From: Macrostomum lignano
Taxonomy: Eukaryota
DNA: 64,000 nucleotides
Reading direction: 5' to 3'
Assembly (NCBI GenBank): GCA_002269645.1
Contig: NIVC01001310.1
Coordinates: 284,209 to 348,208 of the forward strand
Position numbers and translations under genes: made by a program. The notes under the pieces are model-generated. The model did no database searches and had not been told where the DNA came from. It was given only the letters and a program-made list of their open reading frames with translations. Shown here piece after piece: positions 4,052 to 54,163 of the stretch. Numbering within the stretch: the first letter of the stretch is position 1; each line of letters opens with the position of its first letter.

Positions 4052-7177
<3,126 letters not shown>

Positions 7178-20360: not shown

Positions 20361-20997
20361 CTAATTGAAGTCCACTAGACCAGGAAAAGCGGTTCCAAAT
20401 CTTGCGACAGCATTTTCACCTCCATAGTTATCTGGTTGAAGAGAGCTCCACAGACTTTTGTCCAAGGAAATGTTGCAGGCGACCCAGTGCCAACCTTCTC
20501 CAGGCTCCAGACTGCCAGGTTTTTGGTACCCACCAAGCCAGAACTGACCTCCAGGGCAATATGTCTTGTACATGATGTTCACTCTGCTCATCTCTGCGGT
20601 GTCAGTAACATCCGCCATGATCACCAGACCGCTCTCCGACTCACATTTCTGTCTACTCATCGACCAGTTCCTTGAACCGAAGTGCAGCCTGTACTTTGCT
20701 CCGCACAGGTCGTCTCCGTAGCCAGACGGACACAGCGCGCCCGCCTCGAGTCCCGGCTGCTGCTTCACAAACACCCGGCCTCTCCTGGAGCAGCCGCAGT
20801 CCCTCACCGACTTGCTGCACTTGTCGAACACGAACAGCTGGCACGGACCGTCAGCCAGGCTGAACGCCTGGCAGCGCCGGTTTCTGGTGCACATAGCCGC
20901 ACATTTAATTTTGTTTGTTATATTTGAGTGAATGTCCGTATAGATGCTTTTTACGCACAAACTGCCGTGAATCGAGTGAAACGCTTGCTCGTTGAAG
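20361..20997 (-). CDS. Exon encoding a PAN/apple-like domain plus a C-type lectin-like domain (5' exon not located)
   Basis: KCAAMCTRNRRCQAFSL..CQL is PAN-like. NWSMSRQKCESE...FWLGG...WHW...LWSSLQPDNYGGEN is a CTLD with WIG-like and QPD motifs. An acceptor ACTAG lies at ~20998-21002. Confidence 0.8.
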
Positions 20998-21429
20998 CTA
21001 GTTGTCAAAAAACTGATCACAGAGTATAAATTGAATTAGCAATGTGATTTGTAAGCTCGAAAACATTGCAGGGGTAGCTTAATCTACTACCGTCTTCTTT
21101 GTCTTTGAAATGAATTGAAAATTCTATCCTAGATTCTGCCTATCTAACCAGTATTTATAATAATTTTCGCCTTGCATTGCCATTCTGAACAGCTCTTGGG
21201 GTAACATTAGTTGTGTTTGAGCTGCCAATACGACGCTTTCAATTGCGAGCCTGCATCCAGTCTAAAGTGGATTGCAATTGTACGTTTTTTCGTTGAATTG
21301 CGCATAAAATAAAAACACCTGGGGCAGTTAAAAAGTTTATGAATAAATACTTGACGAGCCAAACCGTTTTCTGACATTCAAATCTACTAATGAAAAGGCC
21401 TATTCAGGAGGTGCTGGTCGACATCACGG

Positions 21430-21710
21430 CTCTAGGCAAACTTTTTTACCTCAAGGCCCAGATAAAAAATCCAGCTCATGCCTGCGAGCCAGATACGAGA
21501 CTTAAGGAGAAGGATTGGAGGAGAGATAAGAGGCGAGAGAAAAGATAAAAGGATAGGAGGGAAGAGCTAGAGAAGAGAGAAGATTGGAAAGAGAAGAGAG
21601 CTGAGTTGAGACATAAGCCAATTAAGCAAGCCTTAGTACTCCAGGGCCCGATAGAGAGGCTTGGTGGGTCACATGTGGCCCGCGGGCCGAAGTTTGCTGA
21701 CCAACTCTGA
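21430..21710. mobile_element. hAT-like MITE remnant
   Basis: The left end GGCAAACTTTTTTACCTCAAGGCCCAGAT and right end TGTGGCCCGCGGGCCGAAGTTTGCTGACC resemble subterminal motifs of small hAT elements. The interior is AG-rich. Confidence 0.4.
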
Positions 21711-21994
21711 CTCGAGAGAAGTGCTGAAATTTGAAAAGTCAAACGTTCCATTTTTTAGATCGTAACAGTTATGCATTGTATCTAGAAATAATACGTAAAG
21801 TATGAAAATGTGTTGAAGAAACATTCGTGAGACAGTGTGCTTGTGCTGCGTTGTGCATATGGTTTTGTCATGGACGATGATTAATGTAAGTCACTCGTGG
21901 CTTCACCACTCGTGAAAAATGAATACCACCATGTTAGTTCCTCATAGCATACAAAAAAACCACGGAACGAGCAGAACCTAGACTAGGACACAAT

Positions 21995-22346
21995 TTCCAA
22001 GAAAAGGACGCTTATATCACATTAATATTGCAGAGATTTCTAGGAATCAGAATAAGAGTACTTCTGTTGGAATTTCTTGGAAATATTTGCCTACCATGTA
22101 AGTTAGATATCAAAGTGTACTTGGTAAGCTTTCAACTGCATCAGACGTTTGACCATCGTAAGTTGATACACTAAACGCGAATTCACTTTTTTATCAAAAC
22201 TACGCTCGTAACAACTTGCTTTAAAACATCACGCAAGCAACATGTCATTAGTAGAGCTCTTACTGCGGGAAAAGTACAACGAAAAAAACACTTTTACGCT
22301 CGTACGAAACAGTTTGTGGAAATCTGCAGAAATTTATTTCTAGGAA
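21995..22346. promoter_or_regulatory. Cluster of four STAT-type GAS motifs (TTCN3GAA) upstream of Mx copy 1
   Basis: TTCCAAGAA 21995-22003, TTCTAGGAA 22038-22046, TTCTTGGAA 22074-22082 and TTCTAGGAA 22338-22346, about 330-680 bp upstream of the ATG at 22678. Confidence 0.6.
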
Positions 22347-22677: not shown

Positions 22678-25600
22678 ATGTCATCGCAGAGTTCGTCACA
22701 CCATTCGTCAAGTTCGTCAAAGTCAAGTTCGTCGTCAAACAAGAGGGTATTACTACTACTTCTACTACTACTACTGCTGCTATTATTACTATTATTAATA
22801 CTACTACCATTACTATTACCGAAAGCACGAACATACTTCTACTCCCACAGCAGCACAAGTCCTCTGATGGCCCGACCCCGGCGAAACAGGTCAAGAGCCC
22901 CGATGCCACTGAGACTGTGTCGCTAAACGCTGCTGCAGACGCCTCCAAGCCGTTCACTCCAGCGCTCAGTCAGCAGTATCGCGAGCGAATCCGGCCAGTG
23001 CTGAACAGCATCGATCGTCTCCGGTCGCACGGCCTACAAAATGAGCTCCGCCTGCCCACAGTAGCCGTTGTGGGCGACCAATCGGTAGGCAAATCCAGCG
23101 TGCTGGAGGCCATCTCGGGCGTGGACTTGCCGCGCGGTACCGGCATTGTGACTCGCTGCCCGCTGCAGCTGAGCATGCGCTCAAAGCCGACTGGAGACTG
23201 GACTGGTAGGATTAGGTGAGCATTTTTATTCTATTAATTCACGTCCTTCGAACTCCTTTCTGAATTTACATTAAATACACATAAAAATATCTTGCAAATA
23301 TTAGCAAATTTTGACAGATTTGACAGCGCGGGTATTTGTCTTGCTAAAAAACATTTTCTCAATTACACTGCATGATATGAAATACCAGCAATGAGGCTAT
23401 TCTGCCCTTTCTACTGACCCCTGAGTACATACAAGAGCGCCAGTAATGTACACAGGCACGCAACTCCCACACACTCACACAAGGTGCACAGGGGCCCCGC
23501 ACGGACAACCAACTGGCCAATATTTGTCCCAAATGAATGTGGCCGCACAGGCCCGAAATGAACTAGCTTCCTTTCTGCTGAAAACTAGCAGGCACTTTAG
23601 ATTGAAATGAAAAAATCAAAGTTGAAAAGTAAAGGGGATGTGAACTTGGGATTCAAAAATGGAGCCCGAAACATTCTGTCCCGATTTCTCTACGCTAATC
23701 CTTTCATTTGGAGCCAAAAAGCTGCCGTTATGCAGAAAAAACCCGGCCACTTTAGCATTTGAGGATCCCTATGAGGAGAAATGGGATTAATGGGGAAGAA
23801 TTCATGTAAACTTCAGGTTCCAGAATGGAGCATGAAGCATTGGGTCCCGGTTTCTCTACGCCAATGCCTTCATTTGGAGCTTCAAACGCTTAAAAAACGA
23901 GATGACCATGATATACGCTTCCCTTTTGGCACTTTTCATGTTTGTAGGAAGAATAGGAGCGATAGTAATGTTATTTAATGCCCCCATTATGTTGTTTCTT
24001 AATAATGTTTATGTTATCTTCCCCACCCCAGCTCTCATTGTGTTCCCCCGTTTTGCTGGAGACTTAAATAGCGTCAAGGGGGGTTTGTATCACACATATT
24101 AGACCGACGATTTCTACCTCGACGAAGCGGAGGTTAACCCGAAGTTTTGAGACGGAGGGTGGTAAACATCATTTTCGCACATTTATATCGTGTCAAAGGT
24201 GCAAAGCTCCCCCACAACCATTTCTCCCCATAGAGATCCCCAAATGCTAAAGTGTTCGGGTTTTCGCATGACGGCAGCTTTTTGGCTCCAAATGAAGGGA
24301 TTGGCGTAGAAAAATCAGGACCGAATGTTTCGAACTCCATTTTGACTCTTAAGTTCACATCCCCTTTGTAAACTGCTGCTGGGCAGCACATCATTTGCCT
24401 TCGTCGAGAAAACGTTCTTCCAGTACTCCAGGCTGCAAAATTACAAAGATACGTGGGTTAAAGTATTTCAAAAGTCATTCCAATGTCTTCAAAGTTAACC
24501 AGCTGTAATTTCACAAGTGTCGTTTCCTGCTCTCCTAAGAGCCTTTTCTGACAAGACACCCTTCCCCGACAACAGCTACCAAAATCGCAAGGGCGAGCAC
24601 GTCGAGCGTGAAATATCGAAAAAATGTGAAGTAGACGAAATGGTGCGCAAAGTACAAAACGAAATCACTGGCGACTCGAACGGCGTATCTACGGAGCAGA
24701 TCGACCTGACCATTGAGAGCGCGGATGTGTCCGACCTCACCCTGGTTGACCTGCCCGGCATTGCCAGGTACTCTGAGAAGAATCCGAAGATCAACGAGGT
24801 TACCAAGCAGCTGATTCTGTCTTACATCAGCCAGGACCAGGTGATCATCCTGGTTGTTGTACCCTGCAGCGTGGACATCGAGACAGTGGAGGCCATTGCT
24901 CTAGCCAAACAGGTGGACCCAGGGGGCACCAGGACGATCGGAGTCCTGACTTGCCCGGACCTGACCAACCCTGGCAGCGAGGAGGACATCAAAGCCATCG
25001 TCAACAACCAAGGCAGAGTGCGACTGCACAAAGGCTTTGTCATGGTGAAATGCCGCAGCCCCAAGGAGCTCAGGAACAACATTAGTCTGAGCGAGGTGGC
25101 CAAAATCGAGGAGGATTATTTCAAAAACGATCCGCACTTCAGCCAGCTGCCAAAGGATATTGTTGGCACAAAGACGCTGGCAGAGAAGCTGACAAATGAG
25201 TTGTTCAAGGCAGTGGCTGCGGGCATTGAGACTCTGGAGGAGAGTCTGAAGGTAAGCCAACTGAGAAAGTCAGCTCCACGGGGGAGTTGGCGAACTTCGG
25301 TCCTCAAAGCCTTTCCATTCGGCCTTTAAATACTTTAAATACTTTATATGCAATCCGGCCCACTCAAGGTTTTGTATTTTCTCAGCTCTTCTCCACTCTC
25401 CCTTCTTCTCTTCACTCTCCCATATTTTCTCTTTCCTCTCTCTTCCCTCTCTTTTCTTTTTTAATCTCTCCCTCCTATCACCTATAATCGACTAATCCTG
25501 TCTCTTCTGATATAAGACTTGATGTGGCTGAATGCTTTCAGGTCAGATTTCTATTTGGCGCTTGTTTTCATTTGCGCATGCGTGCTTAGGGTCAACCGAA

Positions 25601-27199
25601 TGTACACGTAATCGTTTTGATTTGACAGCTCGCAAACTGAACTAAATTAAAAAAATTATTTCTCACAGAGCAAGCTGAAGGACTACGAAGAGGAGCTGAA
25701 AGACCTGGAGGACAGTCTGTGCGAGACAGACAGCGACAAGAGAGCCTACCTGATGCGCAAGCTGCAGCAGTTTGCCTCAAAAGTACACGCCGCCACGGCC
25801 AGTCCAGAAGATGAGCGGGACGCATTCGCCACGGGCAGCTCCAGCAGTCTGTACAGCAGCTGTCTGACTAATTGTTCGAGCTTTGGCTACTCTGTGAGCA
25901 GGAGCCAGCCTGGTGAGCTGTTTATTCATTACGAGTTTCCTGGCGCACGGGGCGCTTCTATGCGAAATGCAGTATAGATTTTAGTTGTAAATACTTGTAA
26001 CAACCATGTATCATAATCGGCGACTTTTTTAGCACAAAGTCCATGCACATTATAAAATTTCATTCTTTATGCTAAACTGGCCACGCGAACTCGACGTTGC
26101 TTGACGTCCATGGCGAACATTTTATTTCAGCCTGGATCATTGACTACTCAAAAAAAGTGCCCAATGGTGTGTCCGACGAGGTGCAGCTTAGAAGAGGACG
26201 CGAGCTTCCGACTTTCACATTTGTGTTCCCTGTTGTTCAGAAGATTGTATTCGAAGAATATTTGCCAAAAATAGAATACCTGGCGAAGTGGCTACTCGGT
26301 GAGGTGCAGTCTCAAGTTACTAAATCGCTTGAAAACCTGACCGAAAATTGTTTCAAAGCGTTTCCAAGGCTGCTGCTACTTGTGAAAGAAACTGTTGTCA
26401 AGGCGATCGAAGCCCAAGAGGCTGAGTGTCGTGCAGACCTGGCTAAGCTGATTGCACACGAGCGTCGCTTGTTCACTCAGGACAGTCAGTTTTCGGAAAA
26501 ACTGCGTTACGTTACAGAGCAACAAAAGGAGTTGGCTAAGCAACCTGTTCCTCCGTAAGTAACTGCTTTAATTGGGCGTTTACCGAAGGATTTTAGGAGC
26601 TGACGCCCCTTGTTCCTCGCACTCAAAGAAGCGTCCCTAGCTACTACGAAACTCCTGGCTATGCCTCTCACATTTGGATCTAAAAACACTACAAATGGAA
26701 TAGTTATTATATATCCTATGTAAAAGAGGAGGTTCCATTTTTCAGCCCAACCCTTTTTTCGGGTTTCGGAGCCCCGGCAGCATCACAGCCGATCCGAATC
26801 TCTCGCGAGCCTCAAGCAAGCCCAACCACAAGGGCGTCTCAAGGGGGCTTCAAGAGAGCCGAGCCTCAAGTGAGCCGAGCCTCAAGCGAGCCGTCACATG
26901 AGGAGCAAATTCGCCTGGGAACCAAAGCCTACCTGCTGCTGGCCTGTCAGCGCATCTCGGACACGGTGCCAATGTCGGTGCTGTGCCACATGCTCGACGG
27001 CGTGGCCACAAAGCTGGTTGCCGAGATAACTCGACTGTTTGCCGGCGGCAGCCACCAGGTGGACATCCTGGATCTGCTGCGAGAGAAGGAGGGCAGGCAG
27101 CGGAGGAGGCGCTACCTGATTCAGGCTGCTTGTCAGATGCGCGAGTCGCGGAAGGAGCTGCAGAGCGCCAAGCAGAACCGCATGCTGCTAGAGGACTGA
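22678..27199 (+). CDS. Mx: Mx-like dynamin-family GTPase, copy 1 (intact, 743 aa); exons 22678-22746, 22851-23215, 24576-25251, 25669-25912, 26131-26554, 26746-27199
   Basis: G1 [10 protein letters not shown]2 [14 protein letters not shown]3 DLPG, G4-position TCPD, stalk motif RGRELPTF and [18 protein letters not shown]. There is no PH or PRD domain. All six exons join in phase with GT-AG introns (2232 nt). Confidence 0.92.
23631..24367. mobile_element. Non-autonomous element with ~155-bp terminal inverted repeats in Mx copy 1 intron 2
   Basis: The left arm starts AAAGGGGATGTGAAC (23631-~23785). The right arm (~24215-24367) is its reverse complement at roughly 85% identity. A partial third copy lies at ~23820-23885. 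Confidence 0.75.
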
Positions 27200-28795: not shown

Positions 28796-28980
<185 letters not shown>

Positions 28981-29505
28981 ACACTTAGGCATACTGATGC
29001 CACCCTTCGTAACATGTCAGTAGTACGAAGGGTGCACATGAAACTAGCTCTTACTGCGAGAAAAAAAGCACAGAAAAAACAGGTTTCCAGGAAATAGTTC
29101 ACACGCACATCTGCAGGAATTTTTTGGAAATTTTTGGCGCAGTTCATTATATGTACATGGATGAAAAGGGTGTACAGTTTATCATTATCGTTCCCTGTAG
29201 AAATTCCAACGGACAGTGGTGTATCAGTGCTTAAATGGGAGTGTGAATATGCACTGTACTGCCCGTTGTTCTTATTCAAAATATTTTGCCCTGCCGGCAA
29301 TTTGTTTTCTCTGACTTTGAGTTTCTAAAACGCAAGTCATTTTTTGGATTCTGTATAGCAGACGTACTATACAAACCTGAAATGTCATCGCGGAGTTCGC
29401 CAAATTTGTCGTCAAACAAGCGGGTAAATCATTTTTGTAGTGCTTAGCCATAAAATTTACCGCGCTACATTTGAGTAAAAGACTACTACTTTTCCACTGC
29501 TACTG

Positions 29506-29540
<35 letters not shown>

Positions 29541-30367
29541 GTTACTACTACTAGCAGTACGAACAATACTACCTTTTCTCCCACAGCAGCACAAGTCCTC
29601 TGATGGCCCGACCCCGGCGAAACAGGTCAAGAGCCCTGATGCCACTGAGACTGTGTTGCTAAGCGCTGCTGCAGACGCCTCCAAGACGTTCACTCCAGCG
29701 CTCAGTCAGCAGTATCGCGAGCGAATCCGGCCAGTGCTGAACAGCATCGATCGTCTCCGGTCGCACGGCCTACAAAATGAGCTCCGCCTGCCCACAGTAG
29801 CCGTTGTGGGCGACCAATCGGTGGCAAATCCAGCGTGCTGGAGGCCATCTCGGGCGTGGACTTGCCGCGCGGTAGCGGCATTGTGACTCGCTGCCCGCTG
29901 CAGCTGAGCATGCGCTCAAAGCCAACTGGAGACTGGACTGGTAGGATTAGGTGAGCATTTTTATAGTTCTATCAATTCACCTTCTTAGAACTCCTTTCTG
30001 AATTGACATTAAATGCACATAAAAAATATCTTGCAAATATTAGCAAATTTTGACAGATTTGACAGCGCGGGTATTTGTCTTGCTAAAAAACATTTTCTCA
30101 ATTACACTGCATGATATGAAATACCAGCAATGAGGCTATTCTGCCCTTTCTACTGACCCCTGAGTACATACAAGAGCGCCAGTAATGTACACAGGCACGC
30201 GACTCCCACACACTCACACAAGGTGCACAGGGGCCCCGCACGGACAACCAACTGGCCAATATTTGTCCCAAATGAATGTGGCCGCACAGGCCCGAAATGA
30301 ACTAGCTTCCTTTCTGCTGAAAACTAGCAGGCACTTTAGATTGAAATAAAAAGTCAAGTTGAAAAGT

Positions 30368-31060
30368 AAAGGGGATGTGAACTTAAGAGTCAAAATGGAG
30401 CCCGAAACATTCGGTCCCGGTTTCTCTACGCCAATCCCTTCATTTGGAGCCAAACAGCTGCCGTTATGCCGAAAACCCGACCACTTTAGCATTTGAGGAT
30501 TCCTATGAGGAGAAATGGGATTAATGGGGAAGAATTCATGTGACTTCAGGTTCCAAAAAGAAGCATGAAGCATTGAGTCCCGGTTTCTCTACGCCAATGC
30601 CTTCATTTGGAGCTTCAAACGCTTAAAAAACGAGATGACCATGATATACGCTCCCCTTTTGGCACTTTTCATGTTTGTAGGAAGAATAGGAGCGATAGTA
30701 ATGTTATTTAATGCCCCCATTATTTGTTTCTTAATAATGTTTATGTTATCTTCTCCACCCCAGCTCTCGTCAAGGGGGGTTTGTATCACACATATTAGAC
30801 CGACGATTTCTACCTCGACGAAGCGGAGGTTAACCCGAAGTTTTGAGACGGAGGGTGGTAAACATCATTTTCGCACATCTATATCGTGTCAAAGGTGCAA
30901 AGCTCCCCCACAACCATTTCTCCCCATAGAGATCCCCAAATGCTAAAGTTCGGGTTTTCGCATGACGGCAGCTTTTTGGCTCCAAATGAAGGGATTGGCG
31001 TAGAAAAATCAGGACCGAATGTTTCGAACTCCATTTTACTCTTAAGTTCACATCCCCTTT
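30368..31060. mobile_element. Paralogous TIR element in Mx copy 2 intron 2
   Basis: The same AAAGGGGATGTGAAC...GTTCACATCCCCTTT inverted arms as at 23631-24367, with a small internal deletion. Confidence 0.75.
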
Positions 31061-40341: not shown

Positions 40342-40378
<37 letters not shown>

Positions 40379-40794: not shown

Positions 40795-40977
40795 TTTGGA
40801 GGCTTTTATTCAGAGATGGAATTATTATTAAAGCCTGAAGCGAGTCTGCCCCTCTCTTCGGCTGCTCACTGCCCGCTTTTATAAATGTTCCTTTTAGTTT
40901 GTACCTTGTTGGTAAGTGTACACTTACTTGTACAGTGTAGCGTCTGGGTATGCATGGCCGAGATTCTGGCTAGTCCA

Positions 40978-40993
40978 CGGGAATTCCGGGGAA
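40978..40993. promoter_or_regulatory. kB-like/STAT(N4)-like composite element upstream of ETS-like A
   Basis: CGGGAATTCCGGGGAA. A TATA-like TATAAAA lies on the - strand at ~40877-40883. Confidence 0.4.
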
Positions 40994-42535: not shown

Positions 42536-44446
42536 TCAGTCATCAGTCATCGACAGAAGCATCCTTAGTTCATTAACCAGCCGCAGTCCATTGCAACCAA
42601 AGCGAATCACTCTGCTGCTGGCATACTTAGTCGCTGAATGGCTTTCCACGACGCCAAAGTCACCGCTAGAAGATGACTTTGCTTTGGCCAATCTACAGAA
42701 ATATGTGTCGATGCATTACATTTATATGCAGAACTTGCAATTTATTGTATCAAAGGTTTCTTTACAGTGTCATTTTTCCTTGAGCTTTCTAAGGACTTAA
42801 GATCTCTGTGTTTTGAGTCCATAAAAACTTTAGGGCTTAAATATATATTTTTTAATGTCAACATATTGACACTCAAGTACTCCGACACCGACACAACCGA
42901 CACCGACACACCCGACACACCAGACACAAACATACCCGACACAAGCACACCCGACACAAAAACACCCGACACAAACACACCCGACATCTGAAACCAACAC
43001 ACCCGATACAGACACAACCGACACCGCACATCCGACACTGACACACCCGACACCGACACACCCGACACCAACACGCCCGACGCAAACACACCCGAAACCG
43101 ACACACCCGACACCGACACACACGAAACCGACATACTCGGACACCGAAACACTCCAACAACACACTCCGACAACAAAAATCCGACACCAACACACTCCGA
43201 CACATCGACAATTAGCTCACCTAATTGCCCTCGTGAATGCGGAGCAGGCATTCTTGCTCACTGGTCTTCTATTGACCTTCTGCCAGAGCATCCCAGCGGT
43301 TTCTCTATCGAGAATTTTGAAGTACTCAATAGAACCGCTCCGTTCTTGACCGTTGACGTCGCAGAACACTAGGATTCGACAAAAGCATTTACGACTACTC
43401 AGCAGCACAATTAGTATGAAGTGCAAAACGTTCGGACGATTTAGCGCCGCAAAGCCGAATAGCTTTCCCGAAACAAGTTCGATTACGAGTAGAATAAGTA
43501 CTTTTATCAACGAATCAAGGACGTCATGCTGAATTTAATCAATAAAACTTTACCCACCCATTTTCTCTCTAATGTGCGTCGCCAAACGATCCAGAGTTTC
43601 TTCTCGAGCTGTCATCGTGTAACCCGGTGGCTGGTCATCGGTGGCAATGCTCACAGATTCCCAGGTCGAGGTAGCCGGTTGGTTTACTGCCGATCGGCCG
43701 CAACTTTGGATGATTGGTAGATTTGGAAGGCTGGGCAGCTGGTCGACGGCAGTTTGACAGGTGACTGGTTGCTGCACTGTGGTAACACTGATAGGGAATG
43801 CTTGAACACCGCAGTTAAACTGTTGCACTGTGGTAACACTGATAGGGAATGCTTGAACACCGCAGTTAAACTGTTGCACTGTGGTAACACTGATAGGGAA
43901 TGCTTGAACACCGCAGTTAAACTGTTGCACTGTGGTAACACTGATAGGAATGCTTGAACACCGCAGTTAAACTGTTGCACTGTGGTAACACTGATAGGGA
44001 ATGCTTGAACACCGCAGTTAAACTGTTGCACTGTGGTAACACTGATAGGGAATGCTTGAACACCGCAGTTAAACTGTTGCACTGTGGTAACACTGATAGG
44101 AATGCTTGAACACCGCAGTTAAACTGTTGCACTGTGGTAACACTGATAGGGAATGCTTGAACACCGCAGTTAAACTGTTGCACTGTGGTAACACTGATAG
44201 GGAATGCTGAACACCGCAGTTAAACTGTTGCACTGTGGTAACACTGATAGGGAATGCTTGAACACCGCAGTTAAACTGTTGCACTGTGGTAACACTGATA
44301 GGGAATGCTTGAACACCGCAGTTAAACTGTTGCACTGTGGTAACACTGATAGGGAATGCTTGAACACCGCAGTTAAACTGTTGCACTGTGGTAACACTGA
44401 TAGGGAATGCTTGAACACCGCAGTTAAACGGTACTATTGTCTGTTC
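42536..44446 (-). CDS. Divergent ETS-domain factor B (5' end and one acceptor unresolved; repeat exon frameshifted as assembled)
   Basis: Exon 44446-43558 carries 17-aa repeats then REETLDRLATHIREKM. The ETS exon ends at 43221 (GMLWQKVNRRPVSKNACSAFTRAIR). The last exon 42692-42536 contains SRVIRFG. Intron positions match A, C and D. Confidence 0.65.
42880..43205. repeat. Degenerate (ACACCG/ACACCC)n low-complexity tract in an ETS-B intron
   Basis: Imperfect GACACC/ACACCC repeats. The V/C/S/G-rich and T/D/P-rich ORFs here are artefacts. Confidence 0.85.
43772..44428 (-). repeat. 51-bp minisatellite (~13 copies) encoding VQQFNCGVQAFPISVTT
   Basis: Unit GCAGTTAAACTGTTGCACTGTGGTAACACTGATAGGGAATGCTTGAACACC. 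Three units are 50 nt (deletions at ~43947, ~44099, ~44208). Confidence 0.95.
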
Positions 44447-47414: not shown

Positions 47415-48865
47415 TCAGTAGCTGAAGCTCTGAGGCCGAGACACTTGTCGCAGAGTGCGCTTGAATCGCGTCATCTCCTCCATCGACCGTTCGCCAAATC
47501 GGTAAATTCGCTTCTTCTTTCCTTTGCCAGCGTTCAGGTACTCGAAGAAACCTTCTGTTCTTTCTCGCCGGACCCTGTCGAATGTATTTTATGTACGAAA
47601 TTAATTTAAAACATCAAACAGGTGTTAAAGTAACTTTGGAATTTCAGTACTCACCGCATTGCCCTAGCAAAAGTGTCATAGTTTCCCTTCTTGTTTCCCT
47701 TAATCTTCTGCCACAGAAGTCCCATTGTCTCCGTGTCGAGGGTCTTGAAGTGTCGAGCTTCGGAAGTCACTTCGCGACCATTTTCGTCACAGAAGGTGAG
47801 AATCCGCTGCAGGTCTCTAGACTTGTCGCCGTAGGATGAATTCAGCAGGATAACTAGAATCACCTCGTGCACTTTCAGCTTTGATGACATGTCGTCTGGT
47901 TTGCTTCCACGCTTTTCTGCAGGATTTAAGGTGGTTAAATACGAGTATAAGCTATATCAACTGAGATTGTTTGAGTACGTCTGGTTCAGGCAACTACCCA
48001 ACACATACCAATCACTTCGCGAACATAGGCGGCCATGCGCTGAATCTCCTGCTCGCGGTCAAGCGAAACCGATGTGCTGCCGATCGTTGACTCGCCGTCC
48101 TCAGAGCCGAACGTGAATCGGGTGTCGACACTTTCAGCCGGGCTGATCAAATCGAAGGCTGGCGTATCTACCACCGGCTTTACTGTCGACGGCTCGCACT
48201 GCGGCAGGCTGTCTGTAGACACATCGGCAGGCTGCGATAGTCTAATTTCAGCTTGGGTCTGCTTCCCGTTTTCGAAGCCTTTACCCAACTCGGATGAACT
48301 GTTGTCACCTTTGTAGAATTGACCCATCAGATTAATTGTAGGAATGGGCTTCTCAAAAGACTGATCGCTTTGTTTTTGCGTCCGGATTAGTGTCACAGTG
48401 ACTGGCGGTGCCGGATTCTTAGTAGGCTGTAACAGGAAAGCCACCAATTGATGCGTTTAAGCAACTGACTCATTTTAGATTAGCAGTTTTTTAAACTAAC
48501 TACTGAGCTAAGGACTCATTTTTTGTTCTTACGTGAACTTGCGGCAGGTCTGGAACTGCGCTAACGGTCACGGACACGTCTGAGGCGCTGTACTCGTTCA
48601 GCAAATCAGCCAGAATTGTCTCGTCGCTGCTGACGCTGGACTCCATTGTCTGAGGCACAACGTTGGACATCTCCGCGAGTAGAACTACGCTCGGATCCTC
48701 AGCATAGGTCTGAGGCGCTGTTGAAGCTATGCTAGGACCAGGAAGGACCTCTTGTCCAAGGTCCAGCTGCTCTGGCACGCTTGTCACATTGAGATTCGGA
48801 TCAGTGATCGACAATTCATCGACTTCCATGAATTCGAAATCTTGAAGCCTAGTCTCAGGGTCCAT
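47415..48865 (-). CDS. Divergent ETS-domain transcription factor C (390 aa); exons 48865-48533, 48426-48009, 47916-47655, 47574-47415
   Basis: Close paralog of A: MSSKLKVHEVILVILLNSSYGDKSRDLQRILTFCDENG...LLWQKIKGNKKGNYDTFARAMR|VRRERTEGFFEYLNAGKGKKKRIYRFGERS. Phases are consistent (1173 nt). Confidence 0.8.
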
Positions 48866-49124
48866 AACTGTTGTTTGCTAGTTTTTTCTGTGTTTATGAT
48901 TTGTATATTTGGATTTGTAGCAGAGACTCTGCTTCTAGTGCTAATTTTGAAGCAGACGGGCGGCATGCTGCGAGGCTTTTTCTAAGAAATCGTCTGAGCA
49001 ACAACCCCTCTACCTCAGCAGCAACCCCATGCCTTCTACTGTACAATAAGTGTACAAGTCTGGACATGGAACTGAAGGAGAGAATTGAAGTTCCCTTCTG
49101 CGATCTATTTTTAGCACAGGAGCT

Positions 49125-49140
49125 TTCCGCGGAATTCCCG
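49125..49140. promoter_or_regulatory. kB-like/STAT(N4)-like composite element upstream of ETS-like C
   Basis: TTCCGCGGAATTCCCG; its reverse complement CGGGAATTCCGCGGAA is 15/16 identical to 40978-40993. A GAS motif TTCTAAGAA also lies at 48980-48988. Confidence 0.4.
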
Positions 49141-51121
49141 AGGACAAGCCAGTGTTTGCAGACAGACGGACGGAAAAGTCTCATTTGATTACTTTCAATA
49201 GTAAAATAGGAAAGCTAGAGAATTTTGTGATGAATTTAACAAGAATGAAACAAACATTCGAAACTTTCTATACACTTTTTTATTATGATTTTCAGATTCG
49301 TACGTACATAAAATCCTCAATAGCTTTCCTTTCAATCGTATGGGGGCAAATAGGTTCGAAAAAAAGTACGAAATCATGGGCTTCTGAGTTATTGAGACAG
49401 ATGTCACTCAATGTACCGTGATTTCCTTGATCGGAGGTCAAGCCAGGGGCCCAGAGTTTGTGTTTCATTCTGATTTTTTGGCACAGAATACCAGATAACG
49501 ATAATGGTCGAACATTTTCCGTAAATTTAATAAATGCAAACTACCTTTTTTGTTAAGAGCTTTCAGAAGTGCAACGATCGAAAAGCATTGGCGGTGCTGC
49601 TAGCAGCCATTGTCAAGCCCGCCTGTTTTGACAGTCGTTCGGACGCGGCTATTCGTCTCCGGAGTGTTCAAGGCGGATCCCAGGGGTGCTGAACAGACTG
49701 GGCAACGGTCTGGTGACCTATCGAGGGTCTCGGCTGAAATGGGCGCAAAGCTCACACGTGCCCCTAGCCCGTCTTTTCCTAGGAGTCTACAGGAAGTCAA
49801 GTCAGGATGGCCACCTCGGCTGCTGAGGCTTTTGAAGCAACGGCGCAACATGTGGCCGACGCCAAAGTTTCTTCACGTGGCAACATTTGCGTCAATTACA
49901 TCCTGGGACTGACTATAAAAAGGCCAAGATCCAGCTGCAAAAGTGTGGGGCGCGATTGACTCCATCTGGACTGACTGTTTTGTGGGAGAGTGTACTCGTA
50001 TCTACATCAGCAATGAGTCCTGCAGTTTCTCCAGCAGTTTCAGACGATTAGTGTTCCTTTTCTGAGCCGCCCGTACTGCTCTTATTTTTCATTGATTTAT
50101 TAGCTTGTGCTTGAAGAGGCCGCAGACTGAAAAGATCATAAGACTGAGCAGGTAAAAACTCAAAACGAATTAGTCTAACCTACGCTCTGCTACGAGTACA
50201 ATCTCACCGAAATGGATGTGAGCGAATAATTGGGTTCGGAAAAAAGGTTTCTGCACACGCCAAACCAGTTTTTCTGAGTCTAAAATACAAGCTAAAAATG
50301 CAGTTGTGTTTTCTATGGACTTGGCAAAAATTTGCATTTTTGCACAGCGCAAAATGGCATTACGCAGTAGACAATCTTTTAATTCTTTAGAAAATGTTCT
50401 TAAAATTTTGTGTTTAGTTTTGCAACACTGTTTCCGTTTGCAACCACAAAACCATCCCGAATTCTTGGAATTGAAGTCACTACTTGCGATTGCTAAAATA
50501 TTGAAAACTTCTTATCGCGTTTATGCAGTTTTCTTTTGGCCAATGACCCAAATATCTTTTTTTGATATCTACCCTCGTATAATTAGCTCGCAAGTCGCAA
50601 AGTAGTGAGTTAGATGAAATTTCAAGGTAAACAATTTGCTGCTTGCGTTGCGATGTGGCAATAAAATGTTACCGTGTCTAAAAGAAGAAAAGGGCAGAAT
50701 AATGCAAACATAAATGGCTCGAGTTTATACTGTTTTTTCATTGAAGTTAAGAATAGTAGTACCGTATGACTAATTTAGCAAAGTGCTAGAGTTATTGCTG
50801 CCGCCCCATTTTTCAGTTTATAGTGTATAGTTATCGATCCATACTTGGCTCTGGACAGTCTTGGCCGGAGCTATGTACACTCAATTTAGTGAACAGGGTG
50901 GGTATGTGCGCCTTACCCAGCACTCCAGGACCAGGAAAGTACTTATCAAGCAGCGAGGAGAGGAGAGAGAGAGAGCGAAATCTCTCACCCTCAACCACCC
51001 CTCCAACCTCATCCAAGGCCAGACTATCTCTCCACAAAACCCCGTGACTGTGGTACTGTAAACAGGGCAGTTGAAACCGAAAGAAACGCTTTCTCCAACT
51101 CTGTCAAAGCAAGCAGAAGAC

Positions 51122-54100
51122 ATGTCTGACATGGACAGTGTCGAATTCATGGAAGTTGACGGTCAGGAGTAAGTAAAAAGCTTTTAAATTCTTATTTAAT
51201 TTTTTACAGTACTCTTTCACTGACTTTTATTCTACCGATATGATCTAATACTTTTGTCTTTATTCGATTTATTCAATGATTTAAAGCAAATTTGAAGTCT
51301 CATTAGTTTACTTTACTTAGTTTACTTAGTTTACTTTGCCATATAAGATGCTGGTTTTGATTTAAATATTGCTTACAGAGTATGTTAAACTTCGTTCTTA
51401 TTCAATCAATACACCCACAATTTAAAAACCATCTTTCAGCCTTCAGGAGCAAGGTCTGTCCTTGCCAGATTTGGACATATTGAAGCCATCTGAAGATGTT
51501 CGTGGCCGACTTCCAGGCTGGAATATCCCAGCTACTACGACGTTTTCAGCGTCGCCAGGGAAAATATCGCTTTTTCCTCAAAAGCAGGCCGTTGTCGAGG
51601 AGTGTGAGAAGATCCTGCTACCGCCAGGCCCTAGTGAATCGCGGAGGCAGCAGACGAACGAGCCAGTCTGCCCGCAGGAGTTCTGTCCTGAGGAGCTTGA
51701 TGACCTGGCTATGGGTGCTGACAGCGCCGCCCCAGGCCTGGAAGGATTTGACTATCTTCTGGACGAAGAAGACGTGAACGTCTTGCCAGTCCTATCGGCG
51801 GCTGACGTCGAAGCAGCATTACCAGGCGCTATTCTGGGCGATGCAGAGTCAGAGGATGTGTTCGCCCCTAGCGTGCCGTCCCTACAGCCTGCAGGTACAG
51901 AAATATATCTGTCACCTCTGAATCGGCGCGAGCGTCGACCGACTATCACTCTGATGCTCACAGCGAAAGAGGAGTCGCTCGGCTGCCCCTCAACTGGGGA
52001 AATTGAGCAGGACATTTATCATGAGTTGATGGATGACAGCTGCGGGATTTCCAGTGATGTGGCTTGTGAGCACAGCTTCTCACCTGCTCCGTAAGTGGAA
52101 TTTTGAGTGCTAAGTTTATACTTTTAAAAACTTGGAATGAGCCAAGAAAGTCAATTTTAGATTAACAATACAAGTTTGAAGAAAAGGTTGAGCCGTTTTT
52201 TCTGAAATCTATCTCACACATACATACAGACAACTCATTTTTAGTATATAGGAAATTGTCCATAAAACTGACAGGTCACCATCGATTGGAGAAAGCCAAG
52301 CGTATTGTGACACGGCCAAATATATTCTCGATCTGCATCGGGAGCTCTCCCGGGGTGAGAAGACTATCTCTTCGTTTTCGTTCTGATGACTATAAACCAT
52401 AAATAGCTTAACAATGATGCTATATCTGACTTTTTCGACCCGCACTCTAAACAGACGTGCCGCTGTCGAAGAAGAAGCCGATGCTTCACGAATTCCTCGG
52501 CTACATTCTACACAGGGGAGCCGAGGACTCGAAGCTATCCACGTTAAGAACTGCCATTTTCTTCTGCGAAGAAGATGGCAAGCGCGCAGACCCGGGGCAA
52601 CCGCGGCAGTATTTTCGCGTCGCAGACTTTTCGGCCGTCTCTGAGGTCTGGAAGAGAATAAAGTGCAATTCTTCCAGCGACTGCACAAAGAATATGAAAA
52701 GAGCGATGCGGTGAGTTTCAAAAGCTTGGAGGCCGAATAATGGGGGTGGGGTACAAATGTGCTGGCTGCAGTTTGTCATTGTCTCTCAAGTCCTAACCCA
52801 CTGTCACCATCACGGTCCACTAACTAGAGAGCATCTACCGACTAAAGTAGGTAAAAATATAAAGAATAAGACCTCAAATAGGTCTTGTAAAGAAACCCGC
52901 CATCTTTAAAAAGATGCAGACTCTCTATTGTAAACATTTTTGGGCAAGATTTGAATGCAGTGTGCTTCACTGGCGAAAAACGAAATAAAAAAACGGCATT
53001 TAGTCTTGGCAACGCGCACTGAGAAAAAGAGAGGGTAGGGGGGTGAGACAGAAAGAGATAGCACTGTACGTACTGGAGTCGCTTCAAGGGTTGAGGTGGT
53101 CGTCGTTTCCCGCGGGACGGCCAGTGGAGGGGGTTGTCGTATTTCCAAGAAATTTTCTGCCACTGCACTTTTATCGCGACTGTCATGCCAGCGAGTGTGT
53201 TTACGCTTTTTGATTTCATTGCAATGGCAAAGCTGCTAGCAAAATGCAGAGGGGTTTGGCCAACGGAAAGAGCCTAGCTGCCTTACTATAAACCATGAGC
53301 TATTTCATTGCATTTGCATTCGCTTTGCGACTCATGCCCAATAGTCGCTGACAATACAAGGCAGGTTTATTTGACTAGTGTTCTGCTTGTGCTAACGATA
53401 AAAAATATTGTATATGCTTATCGATTGCTCTTGCTATTTACCAAGTACAGCTTTAGGTAGAAAAACGGGAAACTTTGTTTCTTAGAAAGCTTTGTAAACT
53501 CCATGGATGACTTGGCTTTACGTGAAAATTAAAACTGCCAAGATAGGACGATAGCTTATTTTGGTATCGCTATTGACGATCTAAATAGGAATTCGGACAA
53601 TCGGAACGGGACTCCATAGAGATTTAAGCCATGGCCACAGGTCACACCCTAGTCATGGACTTAGCAGTTTAGCAAAGTCTACTTAGGGAGGCTTGGCCAT
53701 AGACTATAACTTTAGACATTCAAAATATGAGAAAAGCCATTCATACAAGGGTTGTGTATCCCAAGCAGCCCGAGTCTGTGGCCTGGCTTGAATGTCTATG
53801 GCGTCCCGTTTTGATTGTCCGAATTCCCATTTAGATCGTCAAAAAACGATAGCAGATAGCGCAGTTATTTTTGCGCTTAAAAATGAAGTATTCGTCTCTG
53901 GGTTGTGTATTTCTTGCTCAAAGTCTCGTCTTCTCTTCAAAGACTTTTTAAGTTTCCGACTCAACTCATTCATGGATGTAAATGTGATTCACTTTCGTAA
54001 CACGATGCATTTTCAAATGAATTTATTTTGCAGAATGTCGACGACCAACGATCGGCATTACTTTATTAATCTGTCTCAGAAATTGCACCGAATGCAGGTG

Positions 54101-54163
54101 TTCCGCTTCGGCGAACGAAGCCTGGAACACTTCAAGAAGGTGTTCCCAACCGCCTACCAGTGA
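51122..54163 (+). CDS. Divergent ETS-domain transcription factor D (387 aa); exons 51122-51168, 51440-52090, 52275-52354, 52455-52710, 54034-54163
   Basis: An acidic N-terminus (EFMEVD, as in C) precedes MLHEFLGYILH...FFCEEDG...SEVWKRIKCNSSSDCTKNMKRAMR|MSTTNDRHYFINLSQKLHRMQVFRFGERS. All five exons join in phase (1164 nt). It is head-to-head with C. Confidence 0.75.

What the first reader, a model, noticed from the sequence alone, without database searches (positions are those of the whole stretch)
20361..54163. Candidate invertebrate innate-immune/antiviral locus: lectin + tandem Mx + four novel ETS-like factors sharing STAT/kB-type motifs
Seen: within ~34 kb lie a C-type lectin, two Mx-like GTPases and four divergent ETS genes. 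TTCN3GAA motifs occur upstream of Mx1 (x4), Mx2 (29085), ETS-C (48980) and ETS-D (50462). A shared kB-like element precedes ETS-A and ETS-C, and an ISRE-like GAAACCGAAA sits at 51073. Known: vertebrate Mx is a JAK/STAT-induced antiviral effector, STATs bind TTCN3GAA, and Rel/NF-kB binds GGGRNWYYCC. Inference: an interferon-independent STAT-driven antiviral module in which the ETS-like paralogs act as inducible secondary regulators. I do not know of a description of this arrangement. Linkage alone does not prove co-function.
Basis: partly seen in the sequence, partly recalled or inferred. Interest (0 to 1): 0.8.

Follow-up and report, generated by a model that had tools for sequence, protein, structure and literature searches.

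The report
Flatworm Mx pair beside ETS-like genes
This stretch of the flatworm Macrostomum lignano genome really holds a lectin-like gene, two tandem Mx antiviral-type GTPase genes and four very divergent ETS-type transcription factor genes, with STAT-type palindromes moderately over-represented, but nothing tested here shows that they work together as one antiviral module.

Summary
The window is the last 64 kb of Macrostomum lignano contig NIVC01001310.1.

**What is there**
- Mx1 is an intact six-exon, 743-aa Mx-clade GTPase.
- Mx2 is its tandem copy. It carries a broken Ty3/gypsy-type LTR retroelement in an intron and three single-base indels that a second copy of the locus lacks.
- The four ETS-like genes are true paralogs with an ETS fold. 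They belong to a divergent family found almost only in M. lignano.
- The "lectin" is a PAN/apple plus C-type-lectin-like ORF with no start codon and no conserved C-terminus.

**Motifs**
- TTCN3GAA is enriched in the region: 23 observed against 13 expected (P about 0.005), and 2.5-fold over other M. lignano loci.
- The 28-bp element with a GGGAATTCC core is real. Its core recurs upstream of a third, distant paralog.
- The ISRE-like site is at chance level.

**Against a single module**
- Two other Mx loci and two other ETS-like loci show no Mx–ETS linkage.
- The two other Mx loci have no such sites within about 2.9 kb upstream.
- No expression data are available.

**Reading**
These are two adjacent tandem gene families. 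The Mx promoters carry plausible STAT-type sites; planarian stat5 and mx1 rise together in a dsRNA response. M. lignano Mx genes are already published. Interest is modest.

The parts
20361..21035 (-). Lectin-like ORF (PAN/apple-like N-terminal part plus C-type-lectin-like part). It has no start codon or signal peptide in the ORF, and it ends before the conserved C-terminal Cys-containing strand of its paralogs. Possibly a pseudogene or an incomplete model.
   Evidence: Weak PAN hits and no Lectin_C hit in Pfam. The family profile matches C-type lectins (codakine 1.3e-5) and an apple domain (1.7e-4) in the PDB. All named homologs are M. lignano proteins, plus two unnamed transcripts. The truncation shows in the alignment.
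21995..22346 (.). Cluster of four TTCYNRGAA palindromes (three of them TTTCN3GAAA), 340-683 bp upstream of the Mx1 ATG.
   Evidence: Four sites within 400 bp has P about 0.016 by block shuffles. The flanks are unrelated, so the sites are not copies of a repeat.
22678..27199 (+). Mx1: an intact Mx-family dynamin-like GTPase gene of 743 aa. Six GT-AG exons: 22678-22746, 22851-23215, 24576-25251, 25669-25912, 26131-26554, 26746-27199.
   Evidence: Splice model and open CDS. Pfam Dynamin_N + Dynamin_M + GED, no other domain family reported. Best PDB hits are human MxB/MxA at 6e-83, against dynamin-1 at 1.6e-42. It is 45-49% identical to vertebrate Mx.
29085..29093 (.). Perfect TTCCAGGAA palindrome 297 bp upstream of the Mx2 ATG, inside the roughly 450-bp promoter stretch homologous to that of Mx1.
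29382..38159 (+). Mx2: tandem duplicate of Mx1, 93-99% nucleotide identity in the exons. It has its own short first exon at 29382-29423 and an LTR retroelement in the intron before its fifth exon. In this assembly copy it has three single-base indels in exons 2-3. The loop region before the GED is shorter and diverged.
   Evidence: The L001 copy of the same gene lacks the three indels.
32832..32967 (+). 5' LTR of the Ty3/gypsy-type retroelement.
   Evidence: Direct repeats 99-100% identical to the 3' LTR. The insertion junction shows when compared with the uninterrupted Mx1 intron.
32968..37113 (+). Interior of the retroelement: a gag-pol region with zinc knuckle, aspartic protease, reverse transcriptase, RNase H and integrase. 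The reading frame is broken.
   Evidence: Pfam hits on the separate ORF pieces. Seven open segments of 110 aa or more, with five frame changes and one in-frame stop between successive segments. The L001 copy has six segments, three frame changes and two in-frame stops.
37114..37251 (+). 3' LTR of the retroelement. The element lies about 25 bp upstream of the acceptor site of the next Mx2 exon.
39568..40794 (-). ETS-A: 349 aa, three exons (40794-40170, 40074-39810, 39727-39568). Identical to BOX15_Mlig007295g1.
   Evidence: Splice model. 100% match to the annotated protein. ETS fold.
40966..40993 (.). 28-bp promoter element with a GGGAATTCC core, 172-199 bp upstream of the ETS-A ATG.
42536..43966 (-). 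ETS-B: the most divergent paralog, not annotated in the assembly. The domain exon and last exon are open and share the family's intron phases. The 5' end is uncertain, and the first-exon ORF runs into a 51-bp tandem array (43773-44429).
   Evidence: No gene is called between ETS-C and ETS-A in L005.
47415..48865 (-). ETS-C: 390 aa, identical to BOX15_Mlig028334g1.
48980..48988 (.). TTTCTAAGAAA palindrome 115 bp upstream of the ETS-C ATG.
49125..49152 (.). Second copy of the 28-bp element with the GGGAATTCC core, inverted relative to ETS-A, 260-287 bp upstream of the ETS-C ATG.
50462..50470 (.). TTCTTGGAA site in the 2.3-kb divergent intergenic region between ETS-C and ETS-D.
51073..51082 (+). 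ISRE-like GAAACCGAAA, 40-49 bp upstream of the ETS-D ATG. A single match at chance level.
   Evidence: 1 against 0.18 expected; 18% of shuffles have at least one. (the general pattern gives 6 against 4.65).
51122..54163 (+). ETS-D: 387 aa as annotated. The last intron holds two more TTTCN3GAAA palindromes (53143, 53479).

Best explanation
**Shown: two tandem gene families side by side.** The region holds two unrelated, lineage-expanded gene families of Macrostomum lignano that grew by local tandem duplication, plus a probably incomplete PAN/C-type-lectin-like ORF.
- The first family is the Mx-clade dynamin-like GTPases. Mx1 is intact. Mx2 is a younger or partly homogenised duplicate with a broken LTR retroelement in an intron.
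- The second is an array of four three- or four-exon genes of a very divergent ETS-domain family that is almost confined to Macrostomum.

**Inferred: how it works.**
- The Mx genes are inducible antiviral-type effectors.
- Their proximal promoters, and the distal cluster upstream of Mx1, carry palindromic TTTCYNRGAAA sites for a dimeric factor, most likely a flatworm STAT5-like protein.
- The ETS-like genes encode sequence-specific DNA-binding proteins that keep the two recognition-helix arginines. They have their own family promoter element with a GGGAATTCC core.
- The adjacency of the two families most likely reflects a duplication-rich genome, not an obligatory functional unit. A minority of the ETS-like genes (C and D) may still share the STAT-type input.
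For: **Organism and locus**
- ETS-A is 100% identical to an M. lignano protein. The contig is identified.

**Mx**
- Mx1 has a complete CDS and the domains Dynamin_N, Dynamin_M and GED.
- Human MxB and MxA score about 280 bits against 149 bits for dynamin-1. Vertebrate Mx proteins are 45-49% identical.
- M. lignano is reported to have at least six Mx genes (PMC11326297).
- The tandem duplication is at 93-99% nucleotide identity, and the promoters are homologous.

**ETS-like family**
- All four genes share intron positions and phases.
- The family profile matches only ETS domains in the PDB.
- The AF2 model has pLDDT 80. The top 50 Foldseek hits are all ETS domains, with TM 0.53-0.81 on the target, mostly 0.65-0.8.
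- hhalign gives 97% probability to a canonical M. lignano ETS protein.
- There are 22 hits among 1.84 billion representatives. The 12 with E at or below 1e-10 are M. lignano proteins or unnamed transcripts.
- An intronless transcript contig confirms the splice junctions.
- Between ETS-A and ETS-C, synonymous sites are saturated while the proteins are 70-82% identical.

**Motifs**
- Enrichment is shown.
- One perfect palindrome lies within 300-340 bp of each Mx ATG.
- The GGGAATTCC core lies within 300 bp upstream of ETS-A, ETS-C and the distant paralog in L007.
- Planarian stat5 and mx1 are co-upregulated in a dsRNA response (PMC8797187).

**Linkage**
- Linkage is absent at four paralogous loci.
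Against: - There are no expression, binding or accessibility data for this locus.
- I could not test whether M. lignano has a STAT gene. One survey reports none in Platyhelminthes (PMC13203501).
- The refined palindromes (TTCYNRGAA, TTTCN3GAAA) were chosen after looking at the data. TTTCN3GAAA at P=0.0014 does not survive correction over 217 palindromes.
- Other AT-rich palindromes also exceed the dinucleotide shuffles, so the shuffle null is lenient.
- The two other Mx paralogs have no such sites within about 2.9 kb upstream.
- All M. lignano Mx-like proteins read TCPD where the G4 motif normally has a lysine, so their GTPase biochemistry may differ from that of studied Mx proteins.
Confidence: 0.45

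Rival explanations
1. The lectin, both Mx genes and the four ETS-like genes form one interferon-independent, STAT- and Rel-driven antiviral module in which the ETS-like paralogs act as inducible secondary regulators.
For: - STAT-type sites occur upstream of Mx1, Mx2, ETS-C and ETS-D and in the last intron of ETS-D. They are enriched in the 34-kb region against both shuffles and other loci.
[quoted passage not shown] This leaves room for a lineage-specific factor family.
- In Nematostella, promoters of poly(I:C)-induced genes are enriched for STAT, IRF, NF-kB and ETS motifs (PMC8476169).
Against: - ETS-A and ETS-B have no TTCN3GAA site.
- The GGGAATTCC element is confined to the ETS-like promoters.
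- A degenerate Rel-type 10-base pattern is depleted in the window: 1 against 6.6 expected.
- Other Mx loci and other ETS-like loci are not linked to each other.
- The lectin-like ORF looks incomplete.
- The ISRE-like site is at chance level.
Confidence: 0.12
2. Pure coincidence. The genes are unrelated neighbours in a gene-dense, duplication-rich segment. The short palindromes are non-functional products of composition and of the general excess of palindromic words in real DNA.
For: - Whole-window enrichment is marginal: 31 against 23, P about 0.04.
- Several unrelated palindromes also beat the dinucleotide shuffles.
- Some counted sites are coding or duplicated. 26250 and 37403 are the same Mx exon. 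48824 and 51146 encode the family's conserved N-terminal EFME motif. 34371 and 36146 lie in the retroelement.
- The two other Mx loci have no sites within about 2.9 kb upstream.
Against: - The a priori motif is still 2.5-fold denser here than in 117 kb of other M. lignano DNA, P=8e-4.
- All eight TTTCN3GAAA sites have the Y-N-R centre.
- TTTCN3GAAA is the top-ranked of 217 palindromes once repeats are masked.
- Both Mx proximal promoters keep one perfect site although they are only about 70% identical.
Confidence: 0.3
3. The palindromes are bound by the ETS-like proteins themselves. Both the TTC(C/T)N(G/A)GAA sites and the GGAATTCC core are pairs of inverted GGAA/TTCC half-sites, which is the ETS core. 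The paralogs would then cross-regulate one another and the neighbouring Mx genes.
For: - All four sites upstream of Mx1 contain a GGAA or TTCC core.
- The 28-bp element has two inverted GGAA cores.
- The family keeps the two arginines of the recognition helix, aligned to those of Elf-3.
- GGAA/TTCC density is 6-9 per 500 bp in these promoters against a window mean of 3.3.
- The nearest solved relatives by sequence are ELF/ESE-type ETS domains.
Against: - GGAA is a very common word.
- The DNA specificity of so divergent a domain cannot be read from sequence. The two tyrosines that follow the arginines in Elf-3 and EHF are replaced in this family, and only one tryptophan is invariant across the family.
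- Pfam Ets scores fall below the curated cut-off.
- There are no binding data.
Confidence: 0.1

Closest known systems
Vertebrate interferon-induced Mx proteins (MxA/Mx1, MxB/Mx2) and the invertebrate Mx orthologs reported in acorn worm, lancelet, abalone and M. lignano (PMC11326297)
   Same: - The architecture is the same: dynamin-type G domain, middle domain and GED.
- The best solved-structure matches are human MxB and MxA, far ahead of dynamin.
- It is 45-49% identical to fish Mx.
- Lineage-specific duplication is seen here, as reported for Mx generally.
   Different: - No interferon system is known in flatworms.
- The G4 motif reads TCPD instead of the usual lysine-containing form in all M. 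lignano paralogs seen.
- There is a Ser-rich N-terminal extension.
- No antiviral activity or inducibility has been shown for these genes.
ETS-domain transcription factors, nearest the ELF/ESE group (Elf-3, EHF, Elf-1, Elf-2, Elf-5)
   Same: - The fold is a winged helix-turn-helix.
- The recognition-helix arginines are aligned with those of Elf-3.
- Flanking helices on both sides of the domain in the model recall the inhibitory helices of Ets-1 and ERG.
   Different: - Sequence identity to the solved ETS domains in the fold alignments is only 16-22%.
- Pfam Ets scores are 14-23 bits, below the 26.9 cut-off.
- The two tyrosines that follow the arginines in Elf-3 and EHF are replaced.
- Only one tryptophan is invariant across the family.
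- No Pointed/SAM domain was found.
- The family is seen only in Macrostomum and a few unnamed transcript assemblies.
Planarian dsRNA response (RIG-I-like receptor PRLR1-dependent upregulation of stat5, mx1, dicer and ago genes after ADAR knockdown; PMC8797187)
   Same: It is a flatworm setting in which an Mx homolog and a STAT homolog rise together without interferon.
   Different: - It is a different species.
- No promoter analysis was reported there.
- No ETS-like or lectin component was described.
- Nothing of the kind has been measured in M. lignano.
Ty3/gypsy (Metaviridae-type) LTR retrotransposons
   Same: - The domain order is the same: zinc knuckle, protease, RT, RNase H, integrase zinc-binding domain and integrase core.
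- It has short direct LTRs and a probable 5-bp target duplication.
   Different: - It is small (4.4 kb) with very short LTRs (about 137 bp).
- The reading frame is broken several times in both copies seen.
- The integrase core match is weak.

Membership tests
Mx subfamily of dynamin-like GTPases | Dynamin-type G domain followed by a middle domain and a GTPase effector domain | tested here: met
   Pfam Dynamin_N 141 bits, Dynamin_M 123 bits and GED 27.6 bits on the spliced Mx1.
Mx subfamily of dynamin-like GTPases | Closer to Mx than to dynamin, Drp1, OPA1 or other subfamilies | tested here: met
   Human MxB/MxA score 6e-83 to 1e-81 against dynamin-1 at 1.6e-42 and Drp1 at 4e-39. The top named hits in the protein search are Mx. 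A published phylogeny places M. lignano Mx in the Mx clade (PMC11326297).
Mx subfamily of dynamin-like GTPases | No pleckstrin-homology domain and no proline-rich domain | tested here: met
   Pfam reports no domain families on Mx1 other than GTPase-type ones.
Mx subfamily of dynamin-like GTPases | Canonical GTP-binding motifs G1-G4 | tested here: inconclusive
   G1 (GDQSVGKS), the G2 threonine and G3 (DLPG) are present. G4 reads TCPD, with cysteine in place of the usual lysine, in Mx1, Mx2 and the paralogs P0007 and P0008.
Mx subfamily of dynamin-like GTPases | Induction by infection or dsRNA, and antiviral activity | not testable with these tools
   No expression or functional data for M. lignano were found. 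Planarian mx1 is dsRNA-responsive (PMC8797187).
ETS-domain transcription factors | Winged helix-turn-helix fold of about 85 residues with ETS topology | tested here: met
   The AF2 model has pLDDT 80.2. The top 50 Foldseek PDB hits are all ETS domains, with probability 1.00 and TM on the target of 0.53-0.81.
ETS-domain transcription factors | Sequence match to the curated family model (Pfam PF00178) above its cut-off | tested here: not met
   Scores are 21.5-22.7 bits for ETS-A and ETS-C, 14 bits for ETS-D and nothing for ETS-B, against a cut-off of 26.9. Profile searches do link the family to ETS: PDB E=2.4e-4, canonical ETS proteins at 1e-7 to 1e-4 in 1.84 billion sequences, and hhalign 97%.
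ETS-domain transcription factors | Two conserved arginines in the recognition helix that contact the GGA core | tested here: met
   R-A-M/I-R is invariant in all six family members aligned and aligns with the same residues of Elf-3 and EHF.
ETS-domain transcription factors | Binding to a GGA(A/T)-core DNA site | not testable with these tools
   No binding data exist. The tyrosines that follow the arginines in Elf-3 and EHF are replaced.
C-type lectin-like domain proteins | Match to the C-type lectin domain model or to solved C-type lectins | tested here: inconclusive
   The single ORF gets no Pfam Lectin_C hit at E<=1. Alone, it matches codakine at E=0.029. The family profile matches codakine at 1.3e-5, mosGCTL-1 at 1.4e-4, snaclecs and DC-SIGN. 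The AF2 model is too poor to use, with pLDDT 48.
C-type lectin-like domain proteins | Complete domain including the last strand with its conserved cysteine | tested here: not met
   The window ORF stops about 15-20 residues before the conserved C-terminal motif present in three of the five paralogs aligned. No downstream exon supplying it was found.
C-type lectin-like domain proteins | Sugar- and calcium-binding tripeptide | tested here: met
   The window ORF has QPD where four of the five paralogs have EPN.
STAT-regulated (GAS-type) promoters | TTCN3GAA palindromes near the start of the gene, above background | tested here: met
   Mx1 has four sites and Mx2 one. Regional enrichment has P=0.005 against shuffles and 8e-4 against other loci.
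STAT-regulated (GAS-type) promoters | A STAT protein encoded by the organism, and occupancy of the sites | not testable with these tools
   No tool finds a protein by name. The literature is mixed: a planarian STAT homolog is reported in PMC8797187, and 'not detected in Platyhelminthes' in PMC13203501.
Ty3/gypsy LTR retrotransposons | LTRs flanking gag-pol with the order protease, RT, RNase H, integrase | tested here: met

The most novel reading that the evidence does not exclude
In Macrostomum, which belongs to a phylum where clear NF-kB and IRF3 homologs have not been found, a lineage-specific radiation of very divergent ETS-domain proteins has taken over part of the inducible antiviral transcription programme. 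Under this reading, members of the family sit next to Mx genes, share STAT-type input with them, and act on GGAA-core palindromes in Mx promoters and in their own.
Probability: 0.08. Interest if true: 0.7.

Novelty: new member of a known kind. Interest (0 to 1): 0.35.

Why it matters
If the STAT-type palindromes in the Mx promoters are functional, this locus would be a concrete cis-regulatory handle on an interferon-independent Mx response in a spiralian. Such a response has so far only been suggested, from co-upregulation of stat5 and mx1 in a planarian (PMC8797187).

The divergent ETS-like family is a sizeable radiation of transcription factors, with at least a dozen clusters at the 50% identity level. 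It is almost restricted to Macrostomum, and I found no paper describing it. It has a shared promoter element, so it is a tractable case of lineage-specific regulator evolution.

As it stands, the genes themselves are ordinary members of known families. Mx in M. lignano is already published, so the value lies in a testable hypothesis, not a discovery.

Tried and rejected
1. **Lectin domain.** Pfam on the lectin ORF gave no Lectin_C hit, only sub-threshold PAN hits. The AF2 model of the lectin had pLDDT 48 and was not used for a fold search.
2. **Transposon link for the ETS-like family.** Some UniRef cluster names for family members suggested one ("Transposase", "DDE_Tnp_1_7", "PIPK", "THAP"). 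A Pfam scan of P0131, P0133, P0136 and P0150 found none of these domains. P0133 is simply an older model of ETS-D. The link is rejected.
3. **dN/dS between ETS-A and ETS-C.** Synonymous differences are saturated, so the ratio could not be computed.
4. **Rel-type and ISRE-type patterns.** A degenerate Rel-type 10-base pattern gave 1 match against 6.6 expected. The general ISRE-type pattern gave 6 against 4.65. Neither is enriched.
5. **Synteny.** The only loci with the same gene order are two near-identical copies in the same assembly: NIVC01001656.1 (97-98% identity over most of window 29420-40665, falling to 84-90% beyond, including the same retroelement insertion) and NIVC01001050.1. These are not independent. 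No other Macrostomum genome is available in the collections.
6. **Mx2 as a pseudogene.** The P-loop frameshift and two further single-base indels are absent from the L001 copy. The source is assembly GCA_002269645.1, and assembly indel errors cannot be excluded. I therefore do not call Mx2 dead.
7. **RNA genes.** The Rfam and tRNA scans of the window found nothing.
8. **Literature.** A search for the locus tags found nothing.
9. **Other ORFs.** Pfam on the other long ORFs of the region found nothing.

Full report
**Origin of the window.** The spliced product of the gene at 39568-40794 (minus strand) is 100% identical to the hypothetical protein BOX15_Mlig007295g1 of the free-living flatworm Macrostomum lignano. 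Look-ups of the neighbouring proteins place the window at the last 64,000 bases of contig NIVC01001310.1 of assembly GCA_002269645.1. The sequence is therefore eukaryotic with spliced genes, and I built the gene models by hand.

**The Mx genes.**
- On the plus strand between 22678 and 27199 there are six exons with GT-AG borders. Together they give an uninterrupted 743-residue protein.
- Pfam finds Dynamin_N, Dynamin_M and GED and no other domain family.
- Among solved structures, human MxB and MxA score about 280 bits (E 6e-83 to 1e-81) against 149 bits for dynamin-1.
- In the large protein database the best hits outside Macrostomum are vertebrate Mx proteins at 45-49% identity, followed by acorn worm, abalone and lancelet Mx-like proteins.
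[quoted passage not shown] Mx in this species is therefore known.
- All M. lignano paralogs I saw read TCPD where the G4 nucleotide-binding motif normally carries a lysine.

**Mx2 and the retroelement.**
- Mx2 (29382-38159) is a tandem duplicate of Mx1. Exons 2-4 are 98-100% identical. The fifth exon is about 94% identical, and the start of the sixth, which encodes the loop before the GED, is unalignable and shorter.
- The duplication includes a short, diverged first exon and about 450 bp of proximal promoter at roughly 70% identity.
- Comparison with the uninterrupted Mx1 intron shows that a 4.4-kb LTR element (32832-37251) sits about 25 bp upstream of the acceptor of the fifth exon, in the same orientation as the gene. 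It has 137-bp LTRs that are 99% identical and a probable 5-bp target duplication.
- Its ORF pieces carry a zinc knuckle, aspartic protease, reverse transcriptase, RNase H, and the integrase zinc-binding domain and core. This is a Ty3/gypsy-type element.
- Its gag-pol frame is broken. There are seven open segments of at least 110 residues, with five frame changes and one in-frame stop between successive segments.
- A second copy of the locus holds the same insertion, with six segments, three frame changes and two in-frame stops.
- An intronic insertion need not kill the host gene.
- The window's Mx2 also has three single-base indels in exons 2 and 3, one of them in the P-loop. The second copy of the locus (L001) lacks all three. 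They are either very recent lesions or assembly errors, so I do not call Mx2 a pseudogene.

**The ETS-like genes.**
- A translated search with the C-terminal exon of ETS-A finds four paralogous domains. The last exons were found in the same way.
- All four genes have a phase-1 intron before the domain exon and a phase-2 intron right after the R-A-M/I-R motif. They are therefore true paralogs. ETS-A, B and C lie on the minus strand and ETS-D on the plus strand.
- ETS-A, C and D are annotated in the assembly. ETS-B is not.
- Pfam Ets matches only the middle of the domain and stays below the curated cut-off.
- A profile of six family members, however, matches nothing but ETS domains in the PDB, led by Elf-3, EHF, Elf-1 and Elf-2.
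- The AlphaFold model has pLDDT 80. It gives ETS domains as all of its top 50 Foldseek hits, mostly with target TM-scores of 0.65-0.8.
- hhalign links the family to a canonical M. lignano ETS protein at 97% probability.
- A search of 1.84 billion representative proteins returns only 22 hits. The 12 with E at or below 1e-10 are M. lignano proteins or unnamed transcript assemblies. Of the ten weaker hits, the four I scanned that scored were canonical ETS proteins; one of the ten is a bacterial FG-GAP repeat protein and probably spurious.
- One relative comes from an intronless transcript contig whose ORF runs straight across both splice junctions, so the family is expressed and spliced as modelled.
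- Between ETS-A and ETS-C the synonymous sites are saturated, while the domain is 82% identical at the protein level. This points to purifying selection.
- The two recognition-helix arginines are invariant. The tyrosines that follow them in Elf-3 and EHF are not kept.

**The lectin.**
- The ORF at 20364-21035 gets no Lectin_C hit.
- Its only relatives are M. lignano proteins that UniProt calls C-type lectin domain-containing, plus two transcripts.
- A profile of the family matches C-type lectins (codakine 1.3e-5, mosquito GCTL-1, snaclecs, DC-SIGN) and an apple domain. The family is therefore PAN/apple plus a C-type-lectin-like domain.
- The window's copy has no start codon or signal peptide in the ORF. 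It ends 15-20 residues before the conserved C-terminal motif of its paralogs, and it is not annotated. It may be a pseudogene.

**The motifs.**
- TTCN3GAA, whole window: 31 against 23 expected, P about 0.04.
- TTCN3GAA, the 34-kb region with 1-kb block shuffles: 23 against 13.1, P=0.005.
- TTCN3GAA, against 117 kb of real M. lignano DNA (the rest of the window plus four unrelated loci), repeats masked: 23 against 33 sites, a 2.5-fold excess, P=8e-4.
- Four sites within 400 bp upstream of Mx1 has P about 0.016.
- Looking at the sites, I saw that they extend to TTTCYNRGAAA. There are eight such 11-mers in the window against 2.0 expected, seven of them in the region.
- This pattern ranks first of 217 palindromes of that form against the real background, P=0.0014. 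That choice was post hoc and does not survive correction. Other AT-rich palindromes also exceed the shuffles.
- The flanks of the sites are unrelated, so they are not copies of a repeat.
- Each Mx proximal promoter keeps one perfect site 300-340 bp from its ATG, at slightly different aligned positions.
- Several of the 23 sites are coding, duplicated, or inside the retroelement.

**The kB-like element.**
- It is a 28-bp block, 25/28 identical and inverted, lying 172-199 bp upstream of the ETS-A ATG and 260-287 bp upstream of the ETS-C ATG, in otherwise diverged promoters.
- Its GGGAATTCC core is expected 0.37 times per 64 kb. It also lies 140-148 bp upstream of the start of a distant paralog on another contig.
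- I take it to be a real promoter element of this family.
- It is absent from the Mx and lectin promoters.
- A degenerate Rel-type pattern is depleted in the window.
- The ISRE-like site is a single chance-level match.

**Is it a module?**
- Two other M. lignano Mx loci (L002, L003) have neither ETS-like nor lectin neighbours within 6-10 kb, and no TTCN3GAA within about 2.9 kb upstream.
- Two other ETS-like loci (L007, L008) have no Mx neighbour. One sits beside an EHD-type ATPase, which is not an Mx.
- The same gene order is found only in two near-identical copies of this locus on other contigs.
- Linkage is therefore not a conserved property of either family.

**Literature.**
- In the planarian S. 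mediterranea, ADAR knockdown upregulates RIG-I-like receptors, dicer and argonaute genes, stat5 and mx1. The authors suggest that JAK-STAT may act downstream (PMC8797187).
- M. lignano has RIG-I-like receptors (PMC8476169).
- One survey did not detect STAT in Platyhelminthes (PMC13203501), which conflicts with the planarian report.
- I found nothing on the ETS-like family or on this locus.

**Verdict.**
- The best reading is two adjacent tandem gene families: Mx effectors whose promoters carry plausible STAT-type response elements, and a Macrostomum-specific divergent ETS family with its own promoter element.
- The idea that all of them, with the lectin, form one STAT/Rel-driven antiviral module is not excluded. 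It has no support from linkage at paralogous loci and none from expression.
- The finding is a set of new members of known kinds plus a testable hypothesis.

Noticed in passing
window 32832-37251: A 4.4-kb Ty3/gypsy-type LTR retroelement with very short (137-bp) near-identical LTRs sits inside an Mx2 intron, in the same orientation and about 25 bp from the next acceptor site. Its gag-pol frame is broken. The same insertion is present in a second copy of the locus.
   Followed up: yes
Mx1 protein residues GVLTCPDL (exon 24576-25251); the same in Mx2 and in P0007 and P0008: All M. lignano Mx-like proteins seen have cysteine where the G4 nucleotide-binding motif of dynamin-family GTPases normally has lysine. 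The acorn worm and fish Mx proteins retrieved keep the lysine.
   Followed up: partly
window 26515-26879 versus 37668-37839: Divergence between the tandem Mx paralogs is concentrated at the end of exon 5 and the start of exon 6, which encode the disordered loop before the GED. Exons 2-4 are 98-100% identical, which suggests gene conversion in the 5' half or fast evolution of the loop.
   Followed up: partly
L001 (NIVC01001656.1) and L006 (NIVC01001050.1): The locus exists in at least three near-identical copies in the assembly. L001 is 97-98% identical over most of window 29420-40665. Only the N-terminal part and upstream region of ETS-A and the ETS-B side drop to 84-90%.
   Followed up: partly
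window 43773-44429: A 51-bp tandem array of 12.9 copies at 99% identity is open in all three frames on the minus strand. It runs into the putative first exon of ETS-B and would encode 17-residue repeats.
   Followed up: partly
window 24218-24367, 30368-30518, 30914-31060: A roughly 150-bp dispersed element (about 90% identity) occurs once in the second intron of Mx1 and twice, in opposite orientations, in that of Mx2. It may be a small non-autonomous transposon.
   Followed up: no
window 605-1341, 3565-3883, 4613-5424, 5406-6787, 28796-28979, 42882-43203: There are several satellite and microsatellite arrays: a 48-bp unit x15, a 28-bp unit x11, (TATC)n of about 800 bp, a 273-bp unit x5 at 99% identity, (CAGA)46 just upstream of the Mx2 promoter, and a CA-rich imperfect array in the last intron of ETS-B.
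   Followed up: no
window 59395-61953 (+): Three exon-sized ORFs with Major Facilitator Superfamily matches form a transporter gene downstream of the ETS cluster, outside the finding.
   Followed up: no
window 48824-48832 and 51146-51154: Two of the TTCN3GAA matches are coding. They encode a short acidic motif (E-F-M-E-V-D) at the N-terminus of ETS-C and ETS-D (F-D-I-M-E-I-D in ETS-A), which is conserved across the family.
   Followed up: partly
lectin-like ORF, residues around QPDNYGGEN (window about 20400-20440, minus strand): The window copy has the galactose-type QPD tripeptide where four of its five paralogs have the mannose-type EPN.
   Followed up: no
L007 14819-20653: The distant ETS-like paralog P0132 lies 3 kb from an EHD-type (EH-domain, dynamin-like) ATPase gene. 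It is not an Mx and is probably a coincidence.
   Followed up: no
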